The notes beneath the pieces were generated by a model. The model was not told the origin of the DNA, did no database searches, and saw only the letters and a program-made list of their open reading frames with translations. A stretch of DNA of 64,000 nucleotides from Trichoplax adhaerens (taxonomy: Eukaryota; Animalia; Placozoa). The stretch lies in the NCBI RefSeq assembly GCF_000150275.1, contig NW_002060944.1, positions 3,324,152 to 3,388,151 of the forward strand. The letters are read 5' to 3'. Made by a program: the position numbers and the translations under genes. How positions within the stretch are numbered: position 1 is the first letter of the stretch; the number at the start of each line of letters is the position of its first letter. Below are positions 2,935 to 18,900 of this stretch, one piece after another.

Positions 2935-8092
<5,158 letters not shown>

Positions 8093-9443
8093 ACCCCTTA
8101 TTTTTTATTTGCCTTTGCGAATATAAATAAATCTTTTATTTTCAGCCTTATATTCCACATGAAACGTCCATGTTTATGAATTGGTTTAGTTAACTAAATG
8201 TGATAGATTGTAAATGATCATCACTTTGTTTTAAAAAATGTATCACGGAGCAGCTAATAGCAGTCATGTGATGCTATAATTATTAAACGTGCCTTTAATT
8301 GCTGTATATAATATCTCGCAACCTTTTGTTTTATAGACTAAAAGATTATTAATGCATGTTAATTAATGTTGAAAATTTTGCAAAAAAGACAATGAATATT
8401 ATCTGCAGATACTATTAAAATTATACTCTAATTGATTCGTTTTAAAATCCAAAGGAAACCATAATTTTTATCCGAATGAAATTGTTAGATTTGGGTTACC
8501 CAAGTCATCCAAAAAAGTAGCTATTGATATTATGTGTATAGCTTTGTAATTTATAATGTAACAAAATTGTTATAATATTGGCAACAAGTTTAAATTTGTC
8601 CAAAAAATTGCAAATTATATCAAGCCATAATCTGCATTTTGGCTAAAAGCCTCAGCTGTGCTTTATAATCTAAGAATTTATTCAATGAATTTGCTATCTT
8701 ATTAAGAAAGGTGATCACCAATTGTATACTTGTGCTTTGCATCAATTTATATACCGCTTGACCGTTAGTAAAATTTATCAGCAATCGCTTACCCTTAAAT
8801 GTATGGATTGTGTATCTTTACTCGTGTTTTATATCATCCTAATTGACTTTATTGAAAGAAAGATGTTATTAACTATAGATTACATCATTCCAAGTGTGGT
8901 AATCTACGCGTGAATATTTTCTTAGGTAAGTAAAAGCTAATCTCTGATATATTTAAATAGCAAATGATGATTTTTAGATAATCGGTTGATAAAAAATATG
9001 ATTACTTCTTGAAATTTTCAAGAATGAACAGATAGCTGATGCGCACAATTTAATATAGGATTACTTTTTGTTTTTATTTGTAACTTAGATACATATATTT
9101 TAATTTTTATCCCTACTTAGGACATTTTAGAAAGAGATCGATGTGTATTTTCGTCGGGTTGGTATTACAATCGCCAATAAATATTGGAATGCCTACGTAG
9201 CATTTAGACCTGAAGGAGCAGCTAGTAGTACTGTAGCTAATAAACTTCCTGAGAGCTAAACAATTTCCACAAGAACTGAATAATTTATTCGCTGGATAGC
9301 CCTCTTTAATATTAATTCCTATTCTCCGATACCTTTATGCAGTAGTACTTGTCTTGGCATATTTCAAGTTAATACTTTAATGAATGCATACGCGAATAGT
9401 CGTTGGCGAATCCTTTTAGATTTACGAATTACGATAAGTATTC

Positions 9444-12400
9444 TTAATTAGACTTAATACTTTTACCAGCGACGTAAACATTAATGATATTTCTATCATC
9501 CCCTAAAAGGAAGGCAACGTAATTCAGTATGATATTTTGTTTGAAAAAAATTCCCCTATTAGATATATGCCAGATTAGTATGTTCTCAGCTTACCAGCGT
9601 AAAGGAAACGTTGAAATTTTTCCTGCGAAAAACACATTTCAATCACTTTTCTATTACTTAATGGAATGAAATTATGGTTTATATAGTATATATACATCTT
9701 TGTAAAGCTTACCTCCAATCCATCAAAATCGAACGTGGAGATTACAGAATTATCGACGTTACAATCGATGAGAAGGGCATCAAAGTCTTTCCCCGTCTTA
9801 AAAATACATAGTAATTACTGTACGATTACGAAACAAGAATTTGATAGGAACACTTTACATATTGATTGCATGATATGAAATTCGGAGAATATTGATTTAA
9901 CAACGAGTGTAATGGTAAAACCATCAATTAATGTAAGAAATTTTTCAATTGTTACGGCGCTTAGAGTGTAAATCAAGTTTGAATCATCTTAGCAACAAAC
10001 CTGAAAATTTCCGATCCTTTTATCCAATCCTAAGACTATTTAGTAGAGTAAATTAATGGAAAGAATAGTAATTTAAAGCTGTTATACTACGTACATTCTG
10101 TTTACGAATACGACAAGAATTTGCCCTAGTTATAGCTCTAGAAAACATGTAGGTACGTACTACAATAGCAATGTAAAACTGTTTTTAGATTATCTGCATA
10201 CCTTTCGCTCCCCCTAATGTTGCCATACAAAATGCTTCTGCGTTACTGATTGGTTGATATGCAGTTTCTTTCACTTTTCCAATGCTAATAATCTTTGACG
10301 TAGTTATGGCCATCCTTATTGCATTTAATATTGAGACAGAGTAGCCAGCTCCGATATCTAAAAAGGTTTAAAGTTAGCTTATTTAATTGTAGTATCGTTG
10401 CCGATCAGGCTGGCATTAAGTGTTTGATGAAAGAATCAGCACAAAACTAAGTGCACAACAATATCGCTCAATCACCTACCTGTGCCTAGGCCAACGTTAA
10501 CGTTATATTTCAAAAACTTACGAGCATCGAATATACCACTACGTATACTAGAAAGCAATAATGAGTAGTATATATATACGTAAGCCGTAATTTATAAACT
10601 CAAAATAGCCTTAAATTAGTCGTTTTCTATACTATAAAGTAAAATATTTATGATCACATATGCGATAAGTAGGAGTAGATACGAACAAAACTGTAACAAT
10701 TATAAATCATTTATAAATTTAAACTAAGTATCAAATGGACCACTATGGCTACTAGAACACAATAATCCATAAATTATACAAATGTATATACACCAAATAT
10801 ATTCCTACAGACTTGAGCCTAGAATCAAAATAGATTACTACGTATGTCAGAAAGGAATAATTTATATACTGGTTGTCCATAAATTCAAATTTGAGTCTCA
10901 AATAATCGCTACTTACGCGTCTTAACGTAATAATACGCGTATACTGTAATAGACAAAAACCTTAATACGCAAAGATCTGGCTAATGATTGCGAATAATCT
11001 TAGAGACTATTTCAGCCAAATCTATCATTTATTACCTAATATTAGAATTAGGACAGTGAGATACACCAACATTTCGGTCTTTCAATAATTGAATATCTTC
11101 TTCGGTTACGTGGATACAGTGAGCTAAAATAGTCTATCATAAATTTTAAGAAATAGAATCAAATTATACGATTGTGATAGGCTTTAAGATTCCCTATTTC
11201 TTCTCTCATTTATCAGTTAGATCTTTACAGGCTAAATAGTTTATGATTGATAATGGTACAACAAGGTCAGAAAATTTAACAATATTTGAGAATTATTGTA
11301 GCACAGAAATAATTATTTTAAATTAAGATAATGACATTGTACCCGAGGAGTAAGTAGAGATGCTTTATCCAATATGCTGGTATACGTTTTATTATTAGGA
11401 AACATTTCAAAAGCTATTTTGACTTCCTCTGCACTTTGAGCCATTGTTGTCTAAATGAAATTTACCCAGCACATTAGATTAATTAAATTACTCGTCATCA
11501 ATATCCATAAATTGCCTTCTAGCCATTGATCAGAAAAAAATTTACGTATAGAATTATTTTTGAGCCAGTAACTTTATTTCTATAATAAAAACATAGAATC
11601 CTATCTCGTAATCTATTCATTGAATACATCATTCTACCTGAATACAGATCCCGAGATCTTTGGATAATTGATTAAATTTTTGCACGAGTTTTTCGGTTGT
11701 TGTTTGGCGTAATCGAAGCACAAGAACAGGCATTAGTAGCGGACTCTAAAATTAGTTTGGTGAAGTTAAGCACACGTAAAGTATTGATTTATATTTAAAT
11801 TAGAATAAGTTAGGATCTATCAATTAACTTATAAGAAATCAATGCTACGGCATAGATACTCTTACCACACGACTACGCAATGTTCTAACCAGCCTAAGAT
11901 GGATATAATAATATCATAAGCGTTTACGTATATATAGAATATTAGTAGGAATTCCTAATTATAATGCGATATTCGATACCTGACAGTACTTTCATATGCT
12001 TGATTAGATGTCTCAAAGTAAAAATAAGGAGAATTTCTATCCATGCAAGTTTTCCCTATTATTGCTCTTTGTCCTTTTTTAACTAATAATGAAGAATTAT
12101 AGCTGTAAATTGCTATAAGCTTGAGTTCCAATAAGACTTGAAATTGTATTTTATACGATTACTTGGATAAGAACATCAATAATAAAATGATCTACTGAAA
12201 ATCGATTGTCAGAAAATTATTACTCAAAAATAAAATTTAAATTATAATAGTGCAATAAAATCCTGGTTGATCAAAATAATCTTTTGATTATTATTTTCAG
12301 GATTACGATCTTAATATTTATCTTAGTCGACTGCACTAAGAAAATTACAAATTTACCATAAGTAAAATTATCATTATCATTATTCTACTCCAATAATATT

Positions 12401-13429
12401 CCAGTCCAGCAGATAATTTTATCAGCTTTATCCTGCAGTAACTTACTTGTGATATTGGCTAAAGTGGAACAAGCATCAAAATGCATACTCATTAAGTAGC
12501 ATGCGGTTGTGGTCCCATTATCGACCATGCATTTCTGTATAATAGTCGAAGAAATGAATAATTATTGTTAATTAAGCAACATAAATAACAAGTGCAGGGA
12601 ATTAAAACGTCAACATAGATTTTTTTCTTAGATTTAAAAGTTCCAGCGATAAGCACATTCTAAAACTAACATTTCATATTATGAATACTCGATCGTTAAA
12701 ATTGACTTACAACTAATTTCTGCATTAACCGCTCTGTGTAGTTTAGATCAAAGCATTGAGCTTCTGCTGGTAAAGCACAATTTTCTAGCCAGTCAAAGGA
12801 TTTCTTATCCATATGTGTACATGCCATTGGAAAGCAAGTAGCTGTTGCACGAGTATCAATTAGGCCAGGTATCATAAATTGTCTAGATAGATATCGAAAC
12901 AGAGCAGAAGAAAACTACCTCTATACTTTATGAAATCAATAGTCTCGAATTCTTATGATTATCTACTACTCTTAGTGAATATTTAAGCTAATAAGGACGA
13001 TAACTATGCTCGTACCATATAGGAGCATGAAACTTAAAATGACTGTTCTAGCTAAGTCTAGTCCTTCATGTCATAGAAGTAATACAGTAAGTAGCATAAA
13101 TATTCAATTTGAGGTGATTTTATAGCATATTCAAAGTTACCCTGAAGTCATCGCTAAGATATCTTTTTCATTAAATTGGTATTCCTTTCTTAAGTCTGTC
13201 AAGTTACCACGATCAAAAAAAACTATCTAGAAATTTCGTGTAGAAAAACCAAAACATACAAATATTATCATCTTCGAAGTTCAATCTTTTCCCTGAAATG
13301 GAATACTACCTTGCCACTAGTATTGACGATCATGATATGATCGTGTAAGTAAGCAATTTCCTGACAATTCGTTTCAGAGATATGGACGAAATTGCCAACT
13401 ACGACTAATTGGATATTAGCATTGGCCAT
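9444..13429 (-). CDS. GDA: Guanine deaminase (GDA/cypin) homolog, 15 exons, about 446 aa, catalytic residues degenerate
   Basis: Phase-compatible GT-AG exons give MANANIQLVVVGNFVH..., FMIPGLIDT, NGTTTACY, GQRAIIGKTCMD, TILAHCIH, VSHCPNSN, VGLGTDIGAGYS, ATLGGAK, IGNFQTGKDFDALLI and FLYAGDDRNIINVYVAGK. Colinear with human GDA. Confidence 0.92.
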
Positions 13430-15943
13430 TATAGTGATATCTTCAATTATTTTATTTCCGTATTACCGCAGACTAGATTATTAATCATAGAAAAACACAG
13501 CATTATTCACCTCTGGAATACCAGAAGCACTTTCATTTTATTCAGGGTTAAATCTCGTATCTTAAGAGAACTGAATTCGTATCTTTAAAAAATAACAGAA
13601 ATCTGGTTCATAGTATACTAATTGATAGGATGTTAACAAATCTTCTTTTATATTTCTACCCTAAAAATAGATTAACTTAAAGTTCAATATCTCAAACGAG
13701 CTAATTCATATTCAGGAGGGAAATAGAAACCTCGTCTTTAATTGCATGTATTGTATTAATAACTTTTTTCACTTTGGTGTTTACAGCACTACTAGCTTGA
13801 GCTAGCATTTAACAAACTTGCAATAATGCAGTTATATTTCTACAGATCCAGCTAGAAGCTTAATAATATTATGTATTTTAACAACAGATACCAAATTTCT
13901 GCTATTAATAATTACTATTCAAATGTTTTTGTAGAAATACTAAGGAATACTTTACTTTTCTGAAATCAGAATCTAATATTTCAAGAAAACCAAATATCAT
14001 ATCATAATGGATAACAGAAGCCCCAATTTACAACCATATTCGCGATATTGGTGAAGTTTTGTATCTATACTTATCATAGTAATAGGCTAACCTTACATCT
14101 GCAAGGCTGTAATAATTCAGCATTACCTTAGTATTACCCTTAAAGATCCAATAGGATTACAAATTCTCACCAATAGAAAAATTGCAGAGATCTATCCGTT
14201 CTTATTGTATAGGAGTCTACAGTACGAATAAGATAGCACAGTTTCACATAAGATATAATAAATGCTTTTACTAACGACTAAAGATTATAATGTAAATCTA
14301 TAGACAAAATTTCTATAGTGTGTTATTGCAATGACTATGATTCAACACTACCATATGTTGCCTATGATGTAAATCATAATTTATTACTAATATTATGCAA
14401 TATTCATGTTGTCAGTCGGTCAGTCTTAAATCTGTTATTTACTAACATGTACTTTATAGCTTATATGATAAACCAATATTTTCTTGTTTTAATTATACTG
14501 AAGTTTTGCATTACATTTATGCTAGCTGCCTTACTGTATGAGATAAATTTGAGCTTTTTGGTGTTATACTTGATTTCGTAGTAAATAAAAATTTTTTACT
14601 AGTAGTCATACAGGTTTATCATTTACACATACATATATACTACAATATCTCAATTTCATTTCTATCATTCGTGCATCCTATCTGTTTTATTTTATCATTC
14701 GGCAGCAATGACCTTTACAACTATTAATGAATGATGTAGTTGCTTAGAGTCTTTTGTAGATTTTTCTATAACAGCTGATAGAGATTGCAAGTTTCAAAGA
14801 TAGATCATCAAATGTTGGACAACACTTTATTTTGTATTAGCTAGAGACATACAGTTTTAGGTAGATTGATATACGATCGAAAATGTGGAGCGATCATTTT
14901 ATGTTCAATACCTTACTAAAAATGCCCATGATTTGCTGAAAGTAGTTCTAAATTGCCTTATTACCAGCTCTTTGAGACATTGAAGGTATGAGTAAATCAT
15001 TTACGTTTACTTCTTACAAAATTTCGAACTAGACTTTATTTCCTTCATTAAACTAGACTTTAAGCTATATTACAGCATTCATTCACTGCATATAGTTGCA
15101 TGCTCGTGCAATAATAATTTTTACTCATCGTATTTTATATTGAGATTATCTATCTCATTCATATACACATAGCATTTATCTGTTCTTTAATAATGATACG
15201 TATAAAAGATGCTCTTTTTTGCTTTGAATACACATAAGCATGATCTAAATAGAATGTTTTAATTGTTATTCTGCGTATATCACTATGCATATCAACTAGG
15301 TAGGAGCTACACAACTAGATTGAGCTACCTAAACTATAATTACTACTCTACAGTACATCATGAAATGTTTTTAAGAAATTTAGAAAGATACAAGTAAGAT
15401 ATTTGAAAATAATTTATTTAATTAAACGGCAACCTGTATTTTATAAATGATGACTGTGAAAACTATAATTTTTTCGAGTATTGATCATTCCTAATGGTAC
15501 GTCATCAATGAGATTTTATTCGTATACAACGTATCATAAACGTATCTTTCTAACTGCACTTGAAGGTAGATTTTTGTTTATGTTGCAAAGTATAGTGAAA
15601 TGAAACGGGCAATCTTTCATACATACAAAAAGAAATACTATTGGATATAACAAAGGCAAATTACAGCATAATAGTAAATTTATCACAAAGCATCATAATT
15701 TAAAGTGTTCTTCATTTACAAATTAAATATCGAGATTCGCTTGCTGGATACAACTTTTATCCAGCTGTGATTAATCAATCAATCAATATTAACCAAGCAA
15801 GAATTTCACTAAATAATCTGTACAGAAATTCATTATAAGCAGTAGACATTGAACGTATTTAAGTAGTACTACGCCAATTCACTAGGTAATAGAAATAATA
15901 TCAAAACATGAAAATATCTACTATCGCCGTAGAAGCTTAAGAA

Positions 15944-18900
15944 TTAGTTATTTGAATGAACCTTCCAAATCTTAATACAATTATCGTCAGATCCTGATGC
16001 TAATATGTTATCAACTTTCGGATGCCACCTAACAACATTTACGTCATGATTGTGTGCCTGGTAATAAGCAATAAATAGCTAAAAATTAGGATTTACCAAC
16101 CTAATAAGCGTAAACTACAATCAATGCTGAACTTGAATAAGCACATTTTCTGAGAAAAAACTTTTATTAATTACCTTATCTTTGCATAGTTCCATTGTGG
16201 CAGTAGCCGATGCATCGCTTGCATTCATTTCCTTGAAAGTGTTATTAGTAAAATATTAAACTCAGAACTATTGAAACTAACTGATTTGATATAGATATAG
16301 TAATCCTTACAATAGAGAAGATACGAATTGCATCATCACCACAAGCGGTAGCAATCTTATTGTTTAGTTTAGACCTAGATAGAAGTATAACAGAAACCAA
16401 GAATTAAAGCATGTAATGAAGTTGCAGTTGCAAAGCAATGGGTGACTATATACCAATCAACGTCATAAATCGGCCTATTATGATAACCAGCTATTGTACA
16501 TATACTGATCCACTTTACTTCTGGAGTACCCCATAGTGTCCATTTTCCAAATAAAATTATAGAATTCAATTACAAGCACGATTTTAGTCACATTCATAAA
16601 TTACAATTAAGCAATCTAGTACGCTAAAAAAGTAAGACGCAACAAATAAGTTTTTGAATGTAAAAATTACAAATAAAATCATACCATCAGATGGACCCGA
16701 TTTTAAGCATTTCCAAATTTTTAAAACCTTATCATCCCCACAAGAAACTGGGCAATTAAAATATTAGATACGGTAAGAAAATATTGAAGCCAATACTGTC
16801 TTAAGTTGATTTTTTTTACATTCAATACAAGATAGAATTGATTACCAAATAATTCTCCACTGGAATGAAAGCTGAGCGACCAAACGGTTGATTCATGTCC
16901 AATAAGGGTGTGACTACATTCCCTTGATAAAGATAAGCAGAATTCAGCATTGAGAAAGACTACCTTTGAGTAAGTAAGTAAGTAAGAACGGCTATTGATT
17001 ATCCTTAATAGAAACTGTTTTTATGAGATTGGAATATTGGTCCAGCGTAACTAACCAGTCATCGTCAACCTCTTTATATATCTTGATAGTGTTATCGTAG
17101 CTAGCAGAGACTAGAGCCTGTAAAGTATTGGAAAAAGCAGACAATTTAATTAGCCATATCACCTTTTAGCGATAATTAATATAATAAATTCGAGTACTTT
17201 ATTTAAATTTGCTCTAATCATACGTTTTCTTTTGGACTCCAAACAACATGTTTAACATCTTGAGAATGATCGGTTAATACACTAGCGCATTCATATTCTT
17301 CATCTTCTTCGATAACTTTTATTCAATTAGAAAACGAAGTACAGTAGTTATATAATATAGAATGAATAGTAGCAATTTATTGCAGTACTACAGAATGTTT
17401 AAATGAAACATATTAAATGACCACATACATTCCCAGATCCAGGCAGATTTATCTCTGCTACAAGAAGCCAAATACACTCCAGAAGAAGACCAATTAACAC
17501 ATTTTACTTCATTCTCGTGCCCTTCTAGGGTTGCCATACATTCAAAGTCTGTAACAATTACATTGTAAGCAAGTTATGCTGCATATAAAGCTAATGCCAC
17601 CTCTATTTTCTATTCATTACAGTATAGCTGTTGTTATGATATTATATTGCATAATTTCCCATCAATAGCGAGTAAAAATATATACTTGCCGATAAGACAA
17701 GATCATGCTAGGATAGACTAGAATAAAATAGTTTTATTACCTAAGCAAGTAAACTTAAAACTCTTTGCCAGTATGGTATTTTAGTTTCATTAAATCAATT
17801 TACAAATTACAAGTTAGAATAGAATACGCATGAACGCTTACCTCCATCCTTTTTAGACCAAATACATATTGTTGCATCAAAACTGCATGATGCTAAATAA
17901 TTTCCACAAGGTGACCAAGCCACTTTACGTATAAATAGTTGGTAATGAAAGAGACAAAAGATGTTACATGTTGTTATATTTTAGATTATAGATATACGCG
18001 TACTCGTACGGCGTGATTATTGATATATTAGTTACAGAATTGCAATAGTAATAATCCAGTTACAACAAACCGAGACCAAGACTAAGCAATATTTGACCGA
18101 AATATGCTCTTTGAATTAGTACTAAGCTATGCTATTCTATGAAAGAATCATATATATTCTGTGATCGACAGGTATAGTCAGCTAGATGCATCTGTTACTT
18201 ACCGCTACGTATCGTCCTCGTATGTCCTTCTGTAAGGATACTTTTACAAGTCCATTGATCAGAATCGGAATTTTTAGCCCAAATACGGATGTATTGACCG
18301 AAATTAAAAATCAAGAAAGGGAAAGATAGAGGTAGAAATGCGACAGTCGTCATTTAAATGCCACACAAGTGAAAAGCTATGCAAAATACCTTGTTACATT
18401 GTATAGTTTTGAAACTGCGCTACAGAATTATCACGAGTTTAAATATATTTGTGCATGACTACGAAAGCTAAATATAAATTCTATATACAAGTAATTCTTT
18501 TGTAAGTATGTTAGAACTGTACAATTATCACCTAGTATGATTTATAATCAATTTTGCTACGTATTTATCAAATAAATCCGTTGCCTTAAGTTATTACAAA
18601 AATTATCAGTGGTATTTAATTGTAGCTGAAAAGTTACCATCTGTACAGTGCTAAAACATTGTTTTAGACCTCTGAATTATTTGCCTAGTCGTCATAGATT
18701 ATGCATTTGAGAGAAAGTTAGGTTAATCTAATGTGTCTTATCCACGAAATTATAGGTGATGAAGCTATCTATCCGAGGCTACATCTATTTACATTATATT
18801 GAATCCTAGGAGTTAATGATAACAGTAAATAATCTATCTAACTACGTTTGGCGATATCCATAGCGTTAAGCTGTATTTCTGAGGTCAACTAGATTCATTA

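What the first reader, a model, noticed from the sequence alone, without database searches (positions are those of the whole stretch)
9444..13429. Intact, full-length guanine deaminase that has lost its zinc site: a probable pseudoenzyme
Seen in sequence: 15 phase-compatible exons give about 446 aa with no stop or frameshift. The HxH motif reads PGLIDTRATATCF (12843-12857) where human GDA has PGLVDTHIHASQY. The HxxE motif reads IQTTMAQ (11436-11450) where human has IQSHISE. TPRF becomes VLRL, while the AHC His and GTD Asp are kept. Established: human GDA binds Zn through H82, H84, H240 and D330 and uses E243 in catalysis. CRMP/DPYSL proteins are catalytically dead members of the same amidohydrolase fold, and cypin has non-enzymatic roles (tubulin and PSD-95 binding). 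Inference: loss focused on the active site while the scaffold is kept points to selection for a non-catalytic role, such as purine sensing, scaffolding or partnering an active GDA. It would be an independent CRMP-like pseudoenzyme. New Cys/His residues nearby (TCFPMACTH) could form a different site. The C-terminus (KSN) lacks the cypin PDZ ligand.
Basis: partly seen in the sequence, partly recalled or inferred. Interest (0 to 1): 0.8.

Follow-up and report, generated by a model that had tools for sequence, protein, structure and literature searches.

The report
Conserved dead guanine deaminase, placozoans
Trichoplax's only guanine deaminase gene is intact, well folded and under purifying selection, yet it has lost three of its four zinc-binding residues and two catalytic residues, and a distant placozoan shares those losses, so it is a conserved "dead enzyme" with an unknown new job.

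Summary
On the minus strand, 9444-13429, fifteen GT-AG exons give a 446-aa protein identical to the public Trichoplax adhaerens model TRIADDRAFT_53262.

- **Homology:** it is the metazoan guanine deaminase (GDA) orthologue. It matches human GDA 2uz9 at E 1.7e-96, and the AlphaFold model (pLDDT 93) superposes on 2uz9 at TM 0.94.
- **Lost residues:** HxH is R80/T82, the strand-5 His is T237, the catalytic Glu is Q240 and the oxyanion Gln is C85. H276 and D327 remain. Of 123 full-length homologues, 115 keep the full set. Six are exon-skipped bird isoforms. Only the two Trichoplax proteins carry these replacements.
- **Age and selection:** a divergent placozoan (Logan contigs, 73% identity) has exons 1-14 intact, with the same phases and the same dead residues. 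dN/dS is 0.13 (bootstrap 0.08-0.18) at dS about 1.3-1.5. So the loss is old and the gene is not decaying.

Function remains inferred. I found no publication on this. I class it as a new variant of a known kind, of moderate interest.

The parts
9444..13429 (-). Whole gene: 15 exons, 446-aa guanine-deaminase homologue (TRIADDRAFT_53262)
   Evidence: exon model, all introns GT-AG. (identical to public protein P0001). (homology to GDAs).
13310..13429 (-). Exon 1 (aa 1-40), start codon at 13429-13427
   Evidence: 53% identical to the divergent placozoan.
13141..13226 (-). Exon 2
12711..12882 (-). Exon 3, the former HxH metal-binding strand 1 and following loop. It includes R80 (12851-12849), T82 (12845-12843), C85 (12836-12834), C90 and C104.
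   Evidence: aligned to human DTHIH.. 83% identical in the divergent placozoan.
12447..12534 (-). Exon 4 (the invariant GTTT segment is kept)
11980..12082 (-). Exon 5 (the invariant GQR..GK segment is kept)
11866..11893 (-). Exon 6
11638..11745 (-). Exon 7. Residues 208-211 VLRL (11721-11710) stand where other GDAs have TPRF. R210 is kept.
   Evidence: The divergent placozoan has VPRL.
11343..11450 (-). Exon 8, the former HxxE motif: T237 (11447-11445) and Q240 (11438-11436)
   Evidence: aligned to human SHISE.. The same TTMAQ is in the divergent placozoan.
11036..11133 (-). Exon 9. The strand-6 His is retained (H276, 11121-11119), as is the HCPNSN segment.
10480..10547 (-). Exon 10. It ends with the first base of the D327 codon (10480).
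10202..10357 (-). Exon 11. It begins with the last two bases of the retained strand-8 Asp codon (D327, 10357-10356).
10001..10035 (-). Exon 12
9713..9796 (-). Exon 13
9595..9622 (-). Exon 14
9444..9502 (-). Exon 15 with the stop codon (9446-9444). The C-terminus ...IKSN has no PDZ ligand.

Best explanation
This is the single placozoan orthologue of metazoan guanine deaminase (GDA, also called cypin; amidohydrolase superfamily). In the placozoan stem lineage it lost three of the four zinc ligands: the strand-1 HxH became R80/T82 and the strand-5 His became T237. It also lost the proton-shuttling Glu (now Q240) and the oxyanion-stabilising Gln (now C85). The (beta/alpha)8 barrel and the beta-sandwich fold were kept. 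It therefore cannot work as a canonical zinc-dependent guanine deaminase. Since that loss it has stayed under strong purifying selection as a folded protein, and the replacement residues in the old pocket are themselves conserved. The most likely way it works (inferred, not shown) is non-catalytic: the remodelled pocket or the dimer surface binds a small ligand or a protein partner, by analogy with the CRMP/DPYSL relatives of dihydropyrimidinase. A corollary is that Trichoplax itself encodes no amidohydrolase-type guanine deaminase.
For: Shown by tool results. (a) The gene model is exact and public. (b) Orthology: the best hits are metazoan GDAs at 40-42% identity, E about 1e-104. E is 1.7e-96 to human GDA 2uz9. 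In the tree, the placozoans form a 100%-supported clade among the animal and fungal GDAs sampled. (c) Fold: AlphaFold2 gives pLDDT 93.2 and pTM 0.93. The top Foldseek hit is 2uz9, at TM 0.94 and rmsd 1.6 A. (d) Residues: at sites 80/82/85/210/237/240/276/327, 115 of 123 full-length homologues read HHQRHEHD. Six bird exon-skip isoforms lack two of the sites. Only the two Trichoplax proteins read RTCRTQHD. 24 of 95 columns that are at least 90% conserved in 29 GDAs are changed. (e) Age and selection: contig L010 from a divergent placozoan (73% aa identity) carries exons 1-14 with the same phases. 13 of 14 exon lengths are identical and the other differs by 3 nt, while all 13 introns differ in length. 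It has the same R/T/C/T/Q residues. dN/dS is 0.128 by NG86 (bootstrap 0.084-0.180). The ML estimate is dN 0.166 and dS 1.53. (f) The changed positions are maintained: 21 of 24 are identical between the two placozoans, against 224 of 335 variable positions (Fisher p = 0.04). The kept conserved positions are identical at 67 of 67. Several have synonymous codon differences (C85, C90, R210, H276, D327), so time has passed without amino-acid change. (g) No other GDA in the animal genome. The one extra hit is bacterial. (h) P0001 scores 356.9 bits against the guanine-deaminase equivalog TIGR02967, below its 375.4 cut-off. Chicken (480.3) and sponge (431.1) GDAs pass. From the literature: in amidohydrolase-type guanine deaminases, Zn is held by three His, one Asp and water. 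The Gln/Glu/His/Asp machinery is 98-99.9% conserved, and Ala replacement of the Gln or the Glu in a close homologue abolishes detectable activity (PMC13054789, read).
Against: No activity, metal-content or binding measurement exists. No transcript or protein evidence could be reached here. P0001 has no Logan transcript source and the proteome paper is not held. Only two placozoan lineages were available, plus the near-identical H2, so the dN/dS is a single pairwise value near synonymous saturation. H276, D327 and R210 are retained and three new conserved cysteines sit at formerly invariant positions, which also fits a new catalytic or metal site rather than pure binding. The non-catalytic mechanism rests on analogy only.
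Confidence: 0.75

Rival explanations
1. It is a repurposed enzyme. The remodelled pocket (retained H276, D327 and R210, plus new conserved C85, C90 and C104) forms a different metal, redox or nucleophile centre. The protein would then catalyse a new reaction, or sense redox state, rather than being catalytically inert.
For: Three formerly invariant positions (Q85, G90, Y104) became Cys. All three are Cys in both placozoans, two of them through synonymous codon differences. Changed pocket positions are more conserved than variable positions. The strand-6 His and strand-8 Asp are kept. The long stem branch (0.82 substitutions per site, the longest inner branch) followed by a slow crown fits a burst of adaptive change.
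Against: No known amidohydrolase-superfamily chemistry uses such a set of residues. The long stem may simply be an unbroken old branch.
Confidence: 0.15
2. It is still a guanine (or related purine or pterin) deaminase that works with a reduced or alternative ligand set.
For: The overall fold, D327, H276 and the guanine-binding R210 are retained. Trichoplax sp. H2 annotators named it 'Guanine deaminase'.
Against: Three of the four Zn ligands are replaced by R, T and T, none of which is a usual zinc ligand. The catalytic Glu is Gln and the oxyanion Gln is Cys. Single Ala replacements of that Glu or Gln abolish detectable activity in a homologue (PMC13054789). It falls below the TIGR02967 equivalog cut-off. 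The H2 name is automated and homology-based.
Confidence: 0.04
3. It is a unitary pseudogene that is decaying but has not yet been hit by a stop codon or frameshift.
For: The catalytic residues are lost.
Against: The frame is intact in three genomes: H1, H2 and the divergent placozoan. The same dead residues predate their split. dN/dS is 0.13, with an upper bootstrap bound of 0.18, at dS about 1.3-1.5. Exon lengths are conserved while every intron length changed. All 67 retained conserved positions are identical between the lineages. The fold is predicted with high confidence.
Confidence: 0.02
4. It is a regulatory or structural partner of an active GDA paralogue, forming a heterodimer. This was one of the reader's suggestions.
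For: GDAs are dimers (PMC13054789 models its GuaD and NdmH enzymes as homodimers). Dead paralogues often regulate live ones.
Against: Profile searches of the whole 105.6-Mb assembly with TIGR02967 and PF01979 find no second GDA-like gene in the animal genome. The one extra hit is on a 1061-bp, 44% GC, intronless contig. Its GDA fragment is 70% identical to that of Planctobacterium marinum, a marine Alteromonadaceae bacterium.
Confidence: 0.02

Closest known systems
Metazoan guanine deaminase / cypin (EC 3.5.4.3; PDB 2uz9, 4aql; NCBIfam TIGR02967)
   Same: It is the orthologous lineage: 37-42% identity over the full length, the same two-domain amidohydrolase fold (TM 0.94), and retained strand-6 His, strand-8 Asp, guanine-binding Arg and most structural invariants.
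   Different: It lacks the HxH, the strand-5 His, the catalytic Glu and the oxyanion Gln. It scores below the equivalog cut-off. It has no C-terminal PDZ ligand, but the invertebrate GDAs in alignment A1 lack one too.
CRMP/DPYSL proteins (catalytically inactive relatives of dihydropyrimidinase, amidohydrolase superfamily)
   Same: They are the same kind of thing: an amidohydrolase fold kept under selection after loss of the metal-binding residues, and used for binding (tubulin and signalling partners). This comparison rests on established knowledge and was not tested here.
   Different: They belong to a different branch of the superfamily (the hydantoinase/DHPase clade). CRMPs arose by duplication and coexist with an active DHPase. 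Here the sole copy of the enzyme was converted, so the enzymatic function appears to be lost from the animal.
Inactive dihydroorotase-like subunits and domains (Pseudomonas PyrC', the DHOase-like domain of yeast Ura2)
   Same: They are amidohydrolase-fold pseudoenzymes that serve as structural partners. This rests on established knowledge and was not tested here.
   Different: They act within a complex with aspartate transcarbamoylase. No comparable partner is evident here, and the flanking genes (a CIAO1-like WD40 gene and a PI4-kinase) are unrelated.
N2,N2-dimethylguanine hydrolases / AtzB lineage (GDA-related enzymes with changed specificity)
   Same: They show that the GDA scaffold evolves new specificities through changes in pocket residues (PMC13054789).
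   Different: Those enzymes keep the metal site and the Gln/Glu/His/Asp machinery. The placozoan protein does not.

Membership tests
Guanine deaminase, amidohydrolase type (TIGR02967 / EC 3.5.4.3) | Full-length sequence homology and orthology with metazoan GDAs | tested here: met
   E is 1.4e-104 to a hemichordate GDA at 42% identity. E is 1.7e-96 to human 2uz9. The placozoan clade sits among the animal and fungal GDAs sampled.
Guanine deaminase, amidohydrolase type (TIGR02967 / EC 3.5.4.3) | Score above the curated equivalog cut-off (375.4 bits) | tested here: not met
   P0001 scores 356.9 bits. Chicken GDA scores 480.3 and sponge GDA 431.1.
Guanine deaminase, amidohydrolase type (TIGR02967 / EC 3.5.4.3) | HxH zinc ligands at the end of strand 1 | tested here: not met
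   R80 and T82, where 29 of 29 aligned GDAs and 121 of 123 homologues have H and H.
Guanine deaminase, amidohydrolase type (TIGR02967 / EC 3.5.4.3) | Strand-5 His zinc ligand and catalytic Glu (HxxE) | tested here: not met
   T237 and Q240. H and E are present in 29 of 29 aligned GDAs.
Guanine deaminase, amidohydrolase type (TIGR02967 / EC 3.5.4.3) | Gln after the HxH motif that stabilises the oxyanion and contacts the purine | tested here: not met
   C85, where Q is present in 29 of 29 aligned GDAs. The role of the Gln is from PMC13054789.
Guanine deaminase, amidohydrolase type (TIGR02967 / EC 3.5.4.3) | Strand-6 His, strand-8 Asp and the guanine-binding Arg of TPRF | tested here: met
   H276, D327 and R210 are invariant columns and are kept.
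Guanine deaminase, amidohydrolase type (TIGR02967 / EC 3.5.4.3) | Conversion of guanine to xanthine; bound zinc | not testable with these tools
   This needs recombinant protein.
Amidohydrolase-fold pseudoenzyme (CRMP-like in kind, not in descent) | Parent fold retained | tested here: met
   pLDDT 93.2 and pTM 0.93. TM 0.94 to 2uz9.
Amidohydrolase-fold pseudoenzyme (CRMP-like in kind, not in descent) | Catalytic and metal residues lost, and the loss is conserved across species | tested here: met
   The same R/T/C/T/Q residues occur in T. adhaerens, Trichoplax sp. H2 and a divergent placozoan.
Amidohydrolase-fold pseudoenzyme (CRMP-like in kind, not in descent) | Purifying selection after the loss | tested here: met
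   dN/dS 0.128, bootstrap 0.084-0.180. Exon lengths are conserved and intron lengths are not.
Amidohydrolase-fold pseudoenzyme (CRMP-like in kind, not in descent) | Expressed, with a demonstrated non-catalytic function | not testable with these tools
   No expression data were reachable.
Cypin (vertebrate GDA with a synaptic scaffold role) | C-terminal PDZ-binding motif (vertebrate ...SSSV) | tested here: not met
   It ends ...IKSN. The invertebrate and fungal GDAs in alignment A1 also lack the motif, so this does not discriminate.
Cypin (vertebrate GDA with a synaptic scaffold role) | Tubulin binding through the CRMP-homology segment | not testable with these tools
   The corresponding segment (about aa 347-400) aligns well, but it is part of every GDA fold.

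The most novel reading that the evidence does not exclude
The old active-site pocket has been rebuilt rather than merely abandoned. Three cysteines now sit at positions that are invariant Gln, invariant Gly and near-invariant Tyr in other GDAs (C85, C90, C104). Together with the retained H276, D327 and R210 they would form a new metal-, redox- or ligand-sensing centre. Placozoans would then have turned their only guanine deaminase into a new sensor or enzyme, and would live without any host-encoded amidohydrolase-type guanine deaminase.
Probability: 0.15. Interest if true: 0.75.

Novelty: new variant of a known kind. Interest (0 to 1): 0.55.

Why it matters
Pseudoenzymes usually arise from a spare duplicate. 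Here the only copy of a core purine-catabolic enzyme was converted, in one of the earliest-branching animal phyla, and was then kept under selection at a synonymous divergence near saturation.

- It gives a second, independent example, besides CRMPs, of an amidohydrolase barrel reused after its metal site was lost.
- It corrects a database name: the Trichoplax sp. H2 protein is called "Guanine deaminase".
- It predicts that placozoans cannot deaminate guanine themselves, which is testable by isotope tracing.
- It offers a natural experiment on which surfaces of GDA/cypin matter apart from catalysis. That is relevant to the debated non-enzymatic roles of cypin in neurons.

The claim is modest. 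The function is unknown, and expression was not checked here.

Tried and rejected
- **Second GDA with an intact HxH in the genome:** TIGR02967 and PF01979 profile searches of all 1414 contigs found none in the animal genome. The strong hit on contig C75 is a bacterial contaminant.
- **Alternative exons restoring HxH or HxxE:** a regular-expression scan of six frames over 7000-16000 found none.
- **More placozoan orthologues:** a word search with exon 3 found only P0002. The representative search found only P0001 and P0002 as close relatives.
- **Synteny of the divergent contig:** the 3.3 kb upstream in L009 shows no similarity to the window. Orthology therefore rests on exon structure and the tree.
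- **H1 versus H2 selection test:** only 4 synonymous and 3 non-synonymous differences, too few to be informative.
- **Literature:** nothing on TRIADDRAFT_53262, on the three SRA runs, or on a GDA pseudoenzyme. Structural papers on GDA/cypin (PMC6677139, PMC2721013) and the Trichoplax proteome paper are not held. One paper search and one genome search failed on the server. The genome search was repeated.
- **Exon 7 alone:** no PDB match, because it is too diverged.
- **P0010:** listed in the same 90% cluster as P0001, it is an unrelated bacterial PAAR protein.
- **Joined spliced models:** no hand-joined model was sent to any search or folding tool. Searches went exon by exon, by reference. Full-length work used the public protein P0001, which the exon-3 search returned and which a script showed to be identical to the join. 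The joined 427-aa model of the divergent placozoan exists only inside scripts, for pairwise alignment, dN/dS and the tree. Searching and folding it were left out.
Full report
**What is in the sequence**

There are fifteen exons between 13429 and 9444. Every intron is GT..AG. The CDS is 1341 nt, giving 446 codons plus a stop, with no internal stop. Scanned one at a time, the exons hit the guanine deaminase equivalog TIGR02967 in colinear order.

The window lies in a 105.6-Mb assembly of 1414 contigs. A whole-library search with exon 3, given by reference, returned a 446-aa public protein, P0001. A script shows it is identical to the joined exons. It is Trichoplax adhaerens TRIADDRAFT_53262 / XP_002109894.1 / UniProt B3RNR7, named 'uncharacterized protein' or 'amidohydrolase-related domain-containing protein'. 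The Trichoplax sp. H2 orthologue (P0009, 443 of 446 residues identical) is named 'Guanine deaminase'.

On procedure: no hand-joined spliced model was sent to any search or folding tool. Exons were searched by reference, and all full-length work used P0001.

**The active site**

- Aligned to human GDA 2uz9, exon 3 reads D-T-R-A-T against D-T-H-I-H.
- Exon 8 reads T-T-M-A-Q against S-H-I-S-E.
- In a 31-sequence alignment (A1), all 29 non-placozoan GDAs, from sponge to mammals plus fungi, have H, H, Q, H and E at the positions that are R80, T82, C85, T237 and Q240 here.
- H276, D327 and R210 are invariant and kept.
- Across 123 full-length homologues, 115 carry the full HHQRHEHD set. Six are exon-skipped bird isoforms. 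Only the two Trichoplax proteins read RTCRTQHD.

According to PMC13054789, these enzymes hold Zn with three His, one Asp and a water. They use a Gln/Glu/His/Asp machinery that is 98-99.9% conserved, and Ala replacement of the Gln or the Glu in a close homologue abolishes detectable activity. The placozoan protein has therefore lost three of four metal ligands and two of four catalytic residues.

In total, 24 of 95 columns that are at least 90% conserved in the 29 non-placozoan GDAs are changed. P0001 falls below the TIGR02967 cut-off (356.9 against 375.4 bits), while chicken and sponge GDAs pass.

**The fold**

AlphaFold2 on A1 gives mean pLDDT 93.2 and pTM 0.93. The best Foldseek match is human GDA 2uz9, at TM 0.94 and rmsd 1.6 A, followed by yeast, clostridial and E. 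coli GDAs.

**Pseudogene or conserved gene?**

The exon-3 search also returned a 70-aa ORF (P0002, 83% identical) from Logan assemblies of SRA runs SRR30664515-17. Its contigs (L009-L011, GC 32-34%) are genomic.

- L010 carries exons 1-14 of an orthologue with 73% amino-acid identity.
- All exon phases are the same. Thirteen of fourteen exon lengths are identical and the fourteenth differs by exactly 3 nt. All thirteen introns differ in length.
- It has the same R, T, C, T and Q at the dead positions, so by parsimony the loss predates the split.
- Over 426 codon pairs, NG86 gives dN 0.169 and dS 1.32, with omega 0.128 (bootstrap 0.084-0.180). The ML estimate is dN 0.166 and dS 1.53.
- Positions conserved in other GDAs and kept in Trichoplax are identical between the two placozoans at 67 of 67. 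Positions conserved elsewhere but changed in Trichoplax are identical at 21 of 24. Variable positions are identical at 224 of 335 (Fisher p = 0.04 for changed against variable).
- Several of the changed or kept pocket codons differ synonymously.
- H1 and H2 differ at 4 synonymous and 3 non-synonymous sites: 0.52% in coding sequence against 0.86% in non-coding sequence.

A decaying pseudogene is thus excluded for practical purposes.

In a maximum-likelihood tree the placozoan stem is the longest inner branch (0.82 substitutions per site). The crown branches are 0.10 and 0.21. That fits a burst of change followed by constraint, but it could also be an old branch that no other sampled lineage breaks up.

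The joined model of the divergent orthologue was used only inside scripts. It was neither searched nor folded.

**Is there an active GDA elsewhere?**

Profile searches of the whole assembly find the exons of this gene, some other amidohydrolases that do not match the GDA model, and one strong intronless hit on contig C75. C75 is 1061 bp and 43-45% GC. It has tightly packed genes for an OHCU-decarboxylase-like protein, a 5-hydroxyisourate-hydrolase-like protein and a GDA N-terminus with an intact DTHLH. Its GDA fragment is 70% identical to that of Planctobacterium marinum, and the next best hits are other Alteromonadaceae. It is a marine bacterial contaminant.

No alternative exon restoring HxH or HxxE exists within or around the gene.

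As side observations, the assembly gives no uricase (PF01014) hit, but has four xanthine-dehydrogenase/aldehyde-oxidase-like loci in tandem. A cytidine-deaminase-fold guanine deaminase was not searched for.

**How it most likely works**

Shown: the fold is retained, the canonical metal and catalytic set is lost, the loss is old, and selection is strong, including on the replacement residues.

Inferred: the protein acts by binding rather than by zinc-dependent hydrolysis. The conserved remodelled pocket is the likeliest functional surface.

The purine-sensor idea is weakened by loss of the purine-contacting Gln, although R210 remains. The main rival, at about 15%, is that three new conserved cysteines at formerly conserved positions (85, 90, 104), together with H276 and D327, form a new centre. 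VLRL is VPRL there. The missing PDZ ligand is uninformative, because invertebrate GDAs lack it too.

**Comparison with known systems, and novelty**

By descent it is a GDA/cypin orthologue. By function it fails the membership tests for a guanine deaminase. By kind it resembles CRMP/DPYSL and the inactive dihydroorotase-like proteins. Unlike those, it is the sole copy rather than a spare duplicate.

Full-text searches found no paper on this gene, on a GDA pseudoenzyme, or on guanine deaminase in Trichoplax beyond an unrelated deaminase-fold survey.

I class it as a new variant of a known kind, with interest 0.55. Expression, metal content, activity and binding remain to be tested.

**Context**

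In the H2 record the gene lies between a WD40 gene upstream on the same strand and a PI4-kinase downstream, convergent. WD40-like ORFs sit at 16245-17537 on the minus strand of the window. No functional link to either neighbour is suggested.

Noticed in passing
G000 contig C75 (locus L001:1-1061): A 1061-bp contig of the Trichoplax assembly, 43-45% GC and intronless, carries a packed purine-catabolism operon fragment: an OHCU-decarboxylase-like gene, a 5-hydroxyisourate-hydrolase-like gene, and a guanine deaminase N-terminus with an intact HxH. The GDA fragment is 70% identical to that of Planctobacterium marinum (Alteromonadaceae). It is bacterial contamination of the assembly, and it could be mistaken for a Trichoplax GDA.
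   Followed up: yes
L010:3676-3681 (divergent placozoan, end of exon 13): At the position that matches the T. adhaerens GT donor, the divergent placozoan has GCAAGA, so it probably uses a GC-AG intron there. An in-frame GT donor lies 15 nt further downstream as an alternative.
   Followed up: partly
Protein cluster of P0001; L012: The 90% cluster of TRIADDRAFT_53262 lists a 54-aa JGI metagenome protein (P0010). It is an unrelated bacterial PAAR-motif protein, so this is a clustering artefact in the protein collection.
   Followed up: yes
G000 contig C1409, about 770-846 kb: Four xanthine-dehydrogenase/aldehyde-oxidase-like loci (PF02738 hits) lie in tandem. No uricase (PF01014) hit was found anywhere in the assembly. 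Purine catabolism in Trichoplax may be truncated at more than one step.
   Followed up: partly
The 2.8 kb between the GDA start codon and the WD40 gene has no long ORF.
   Followed up: partly
window 9144-13729 versus L013 (Trichoplax sp. H2): H1 and H2 are 99.1% identical over 4.6 kb of this locus: 35 mismatches and 5 gap openings, of which only 7 mismatches fall in the 1341 coding bases.
   Followed up: yes
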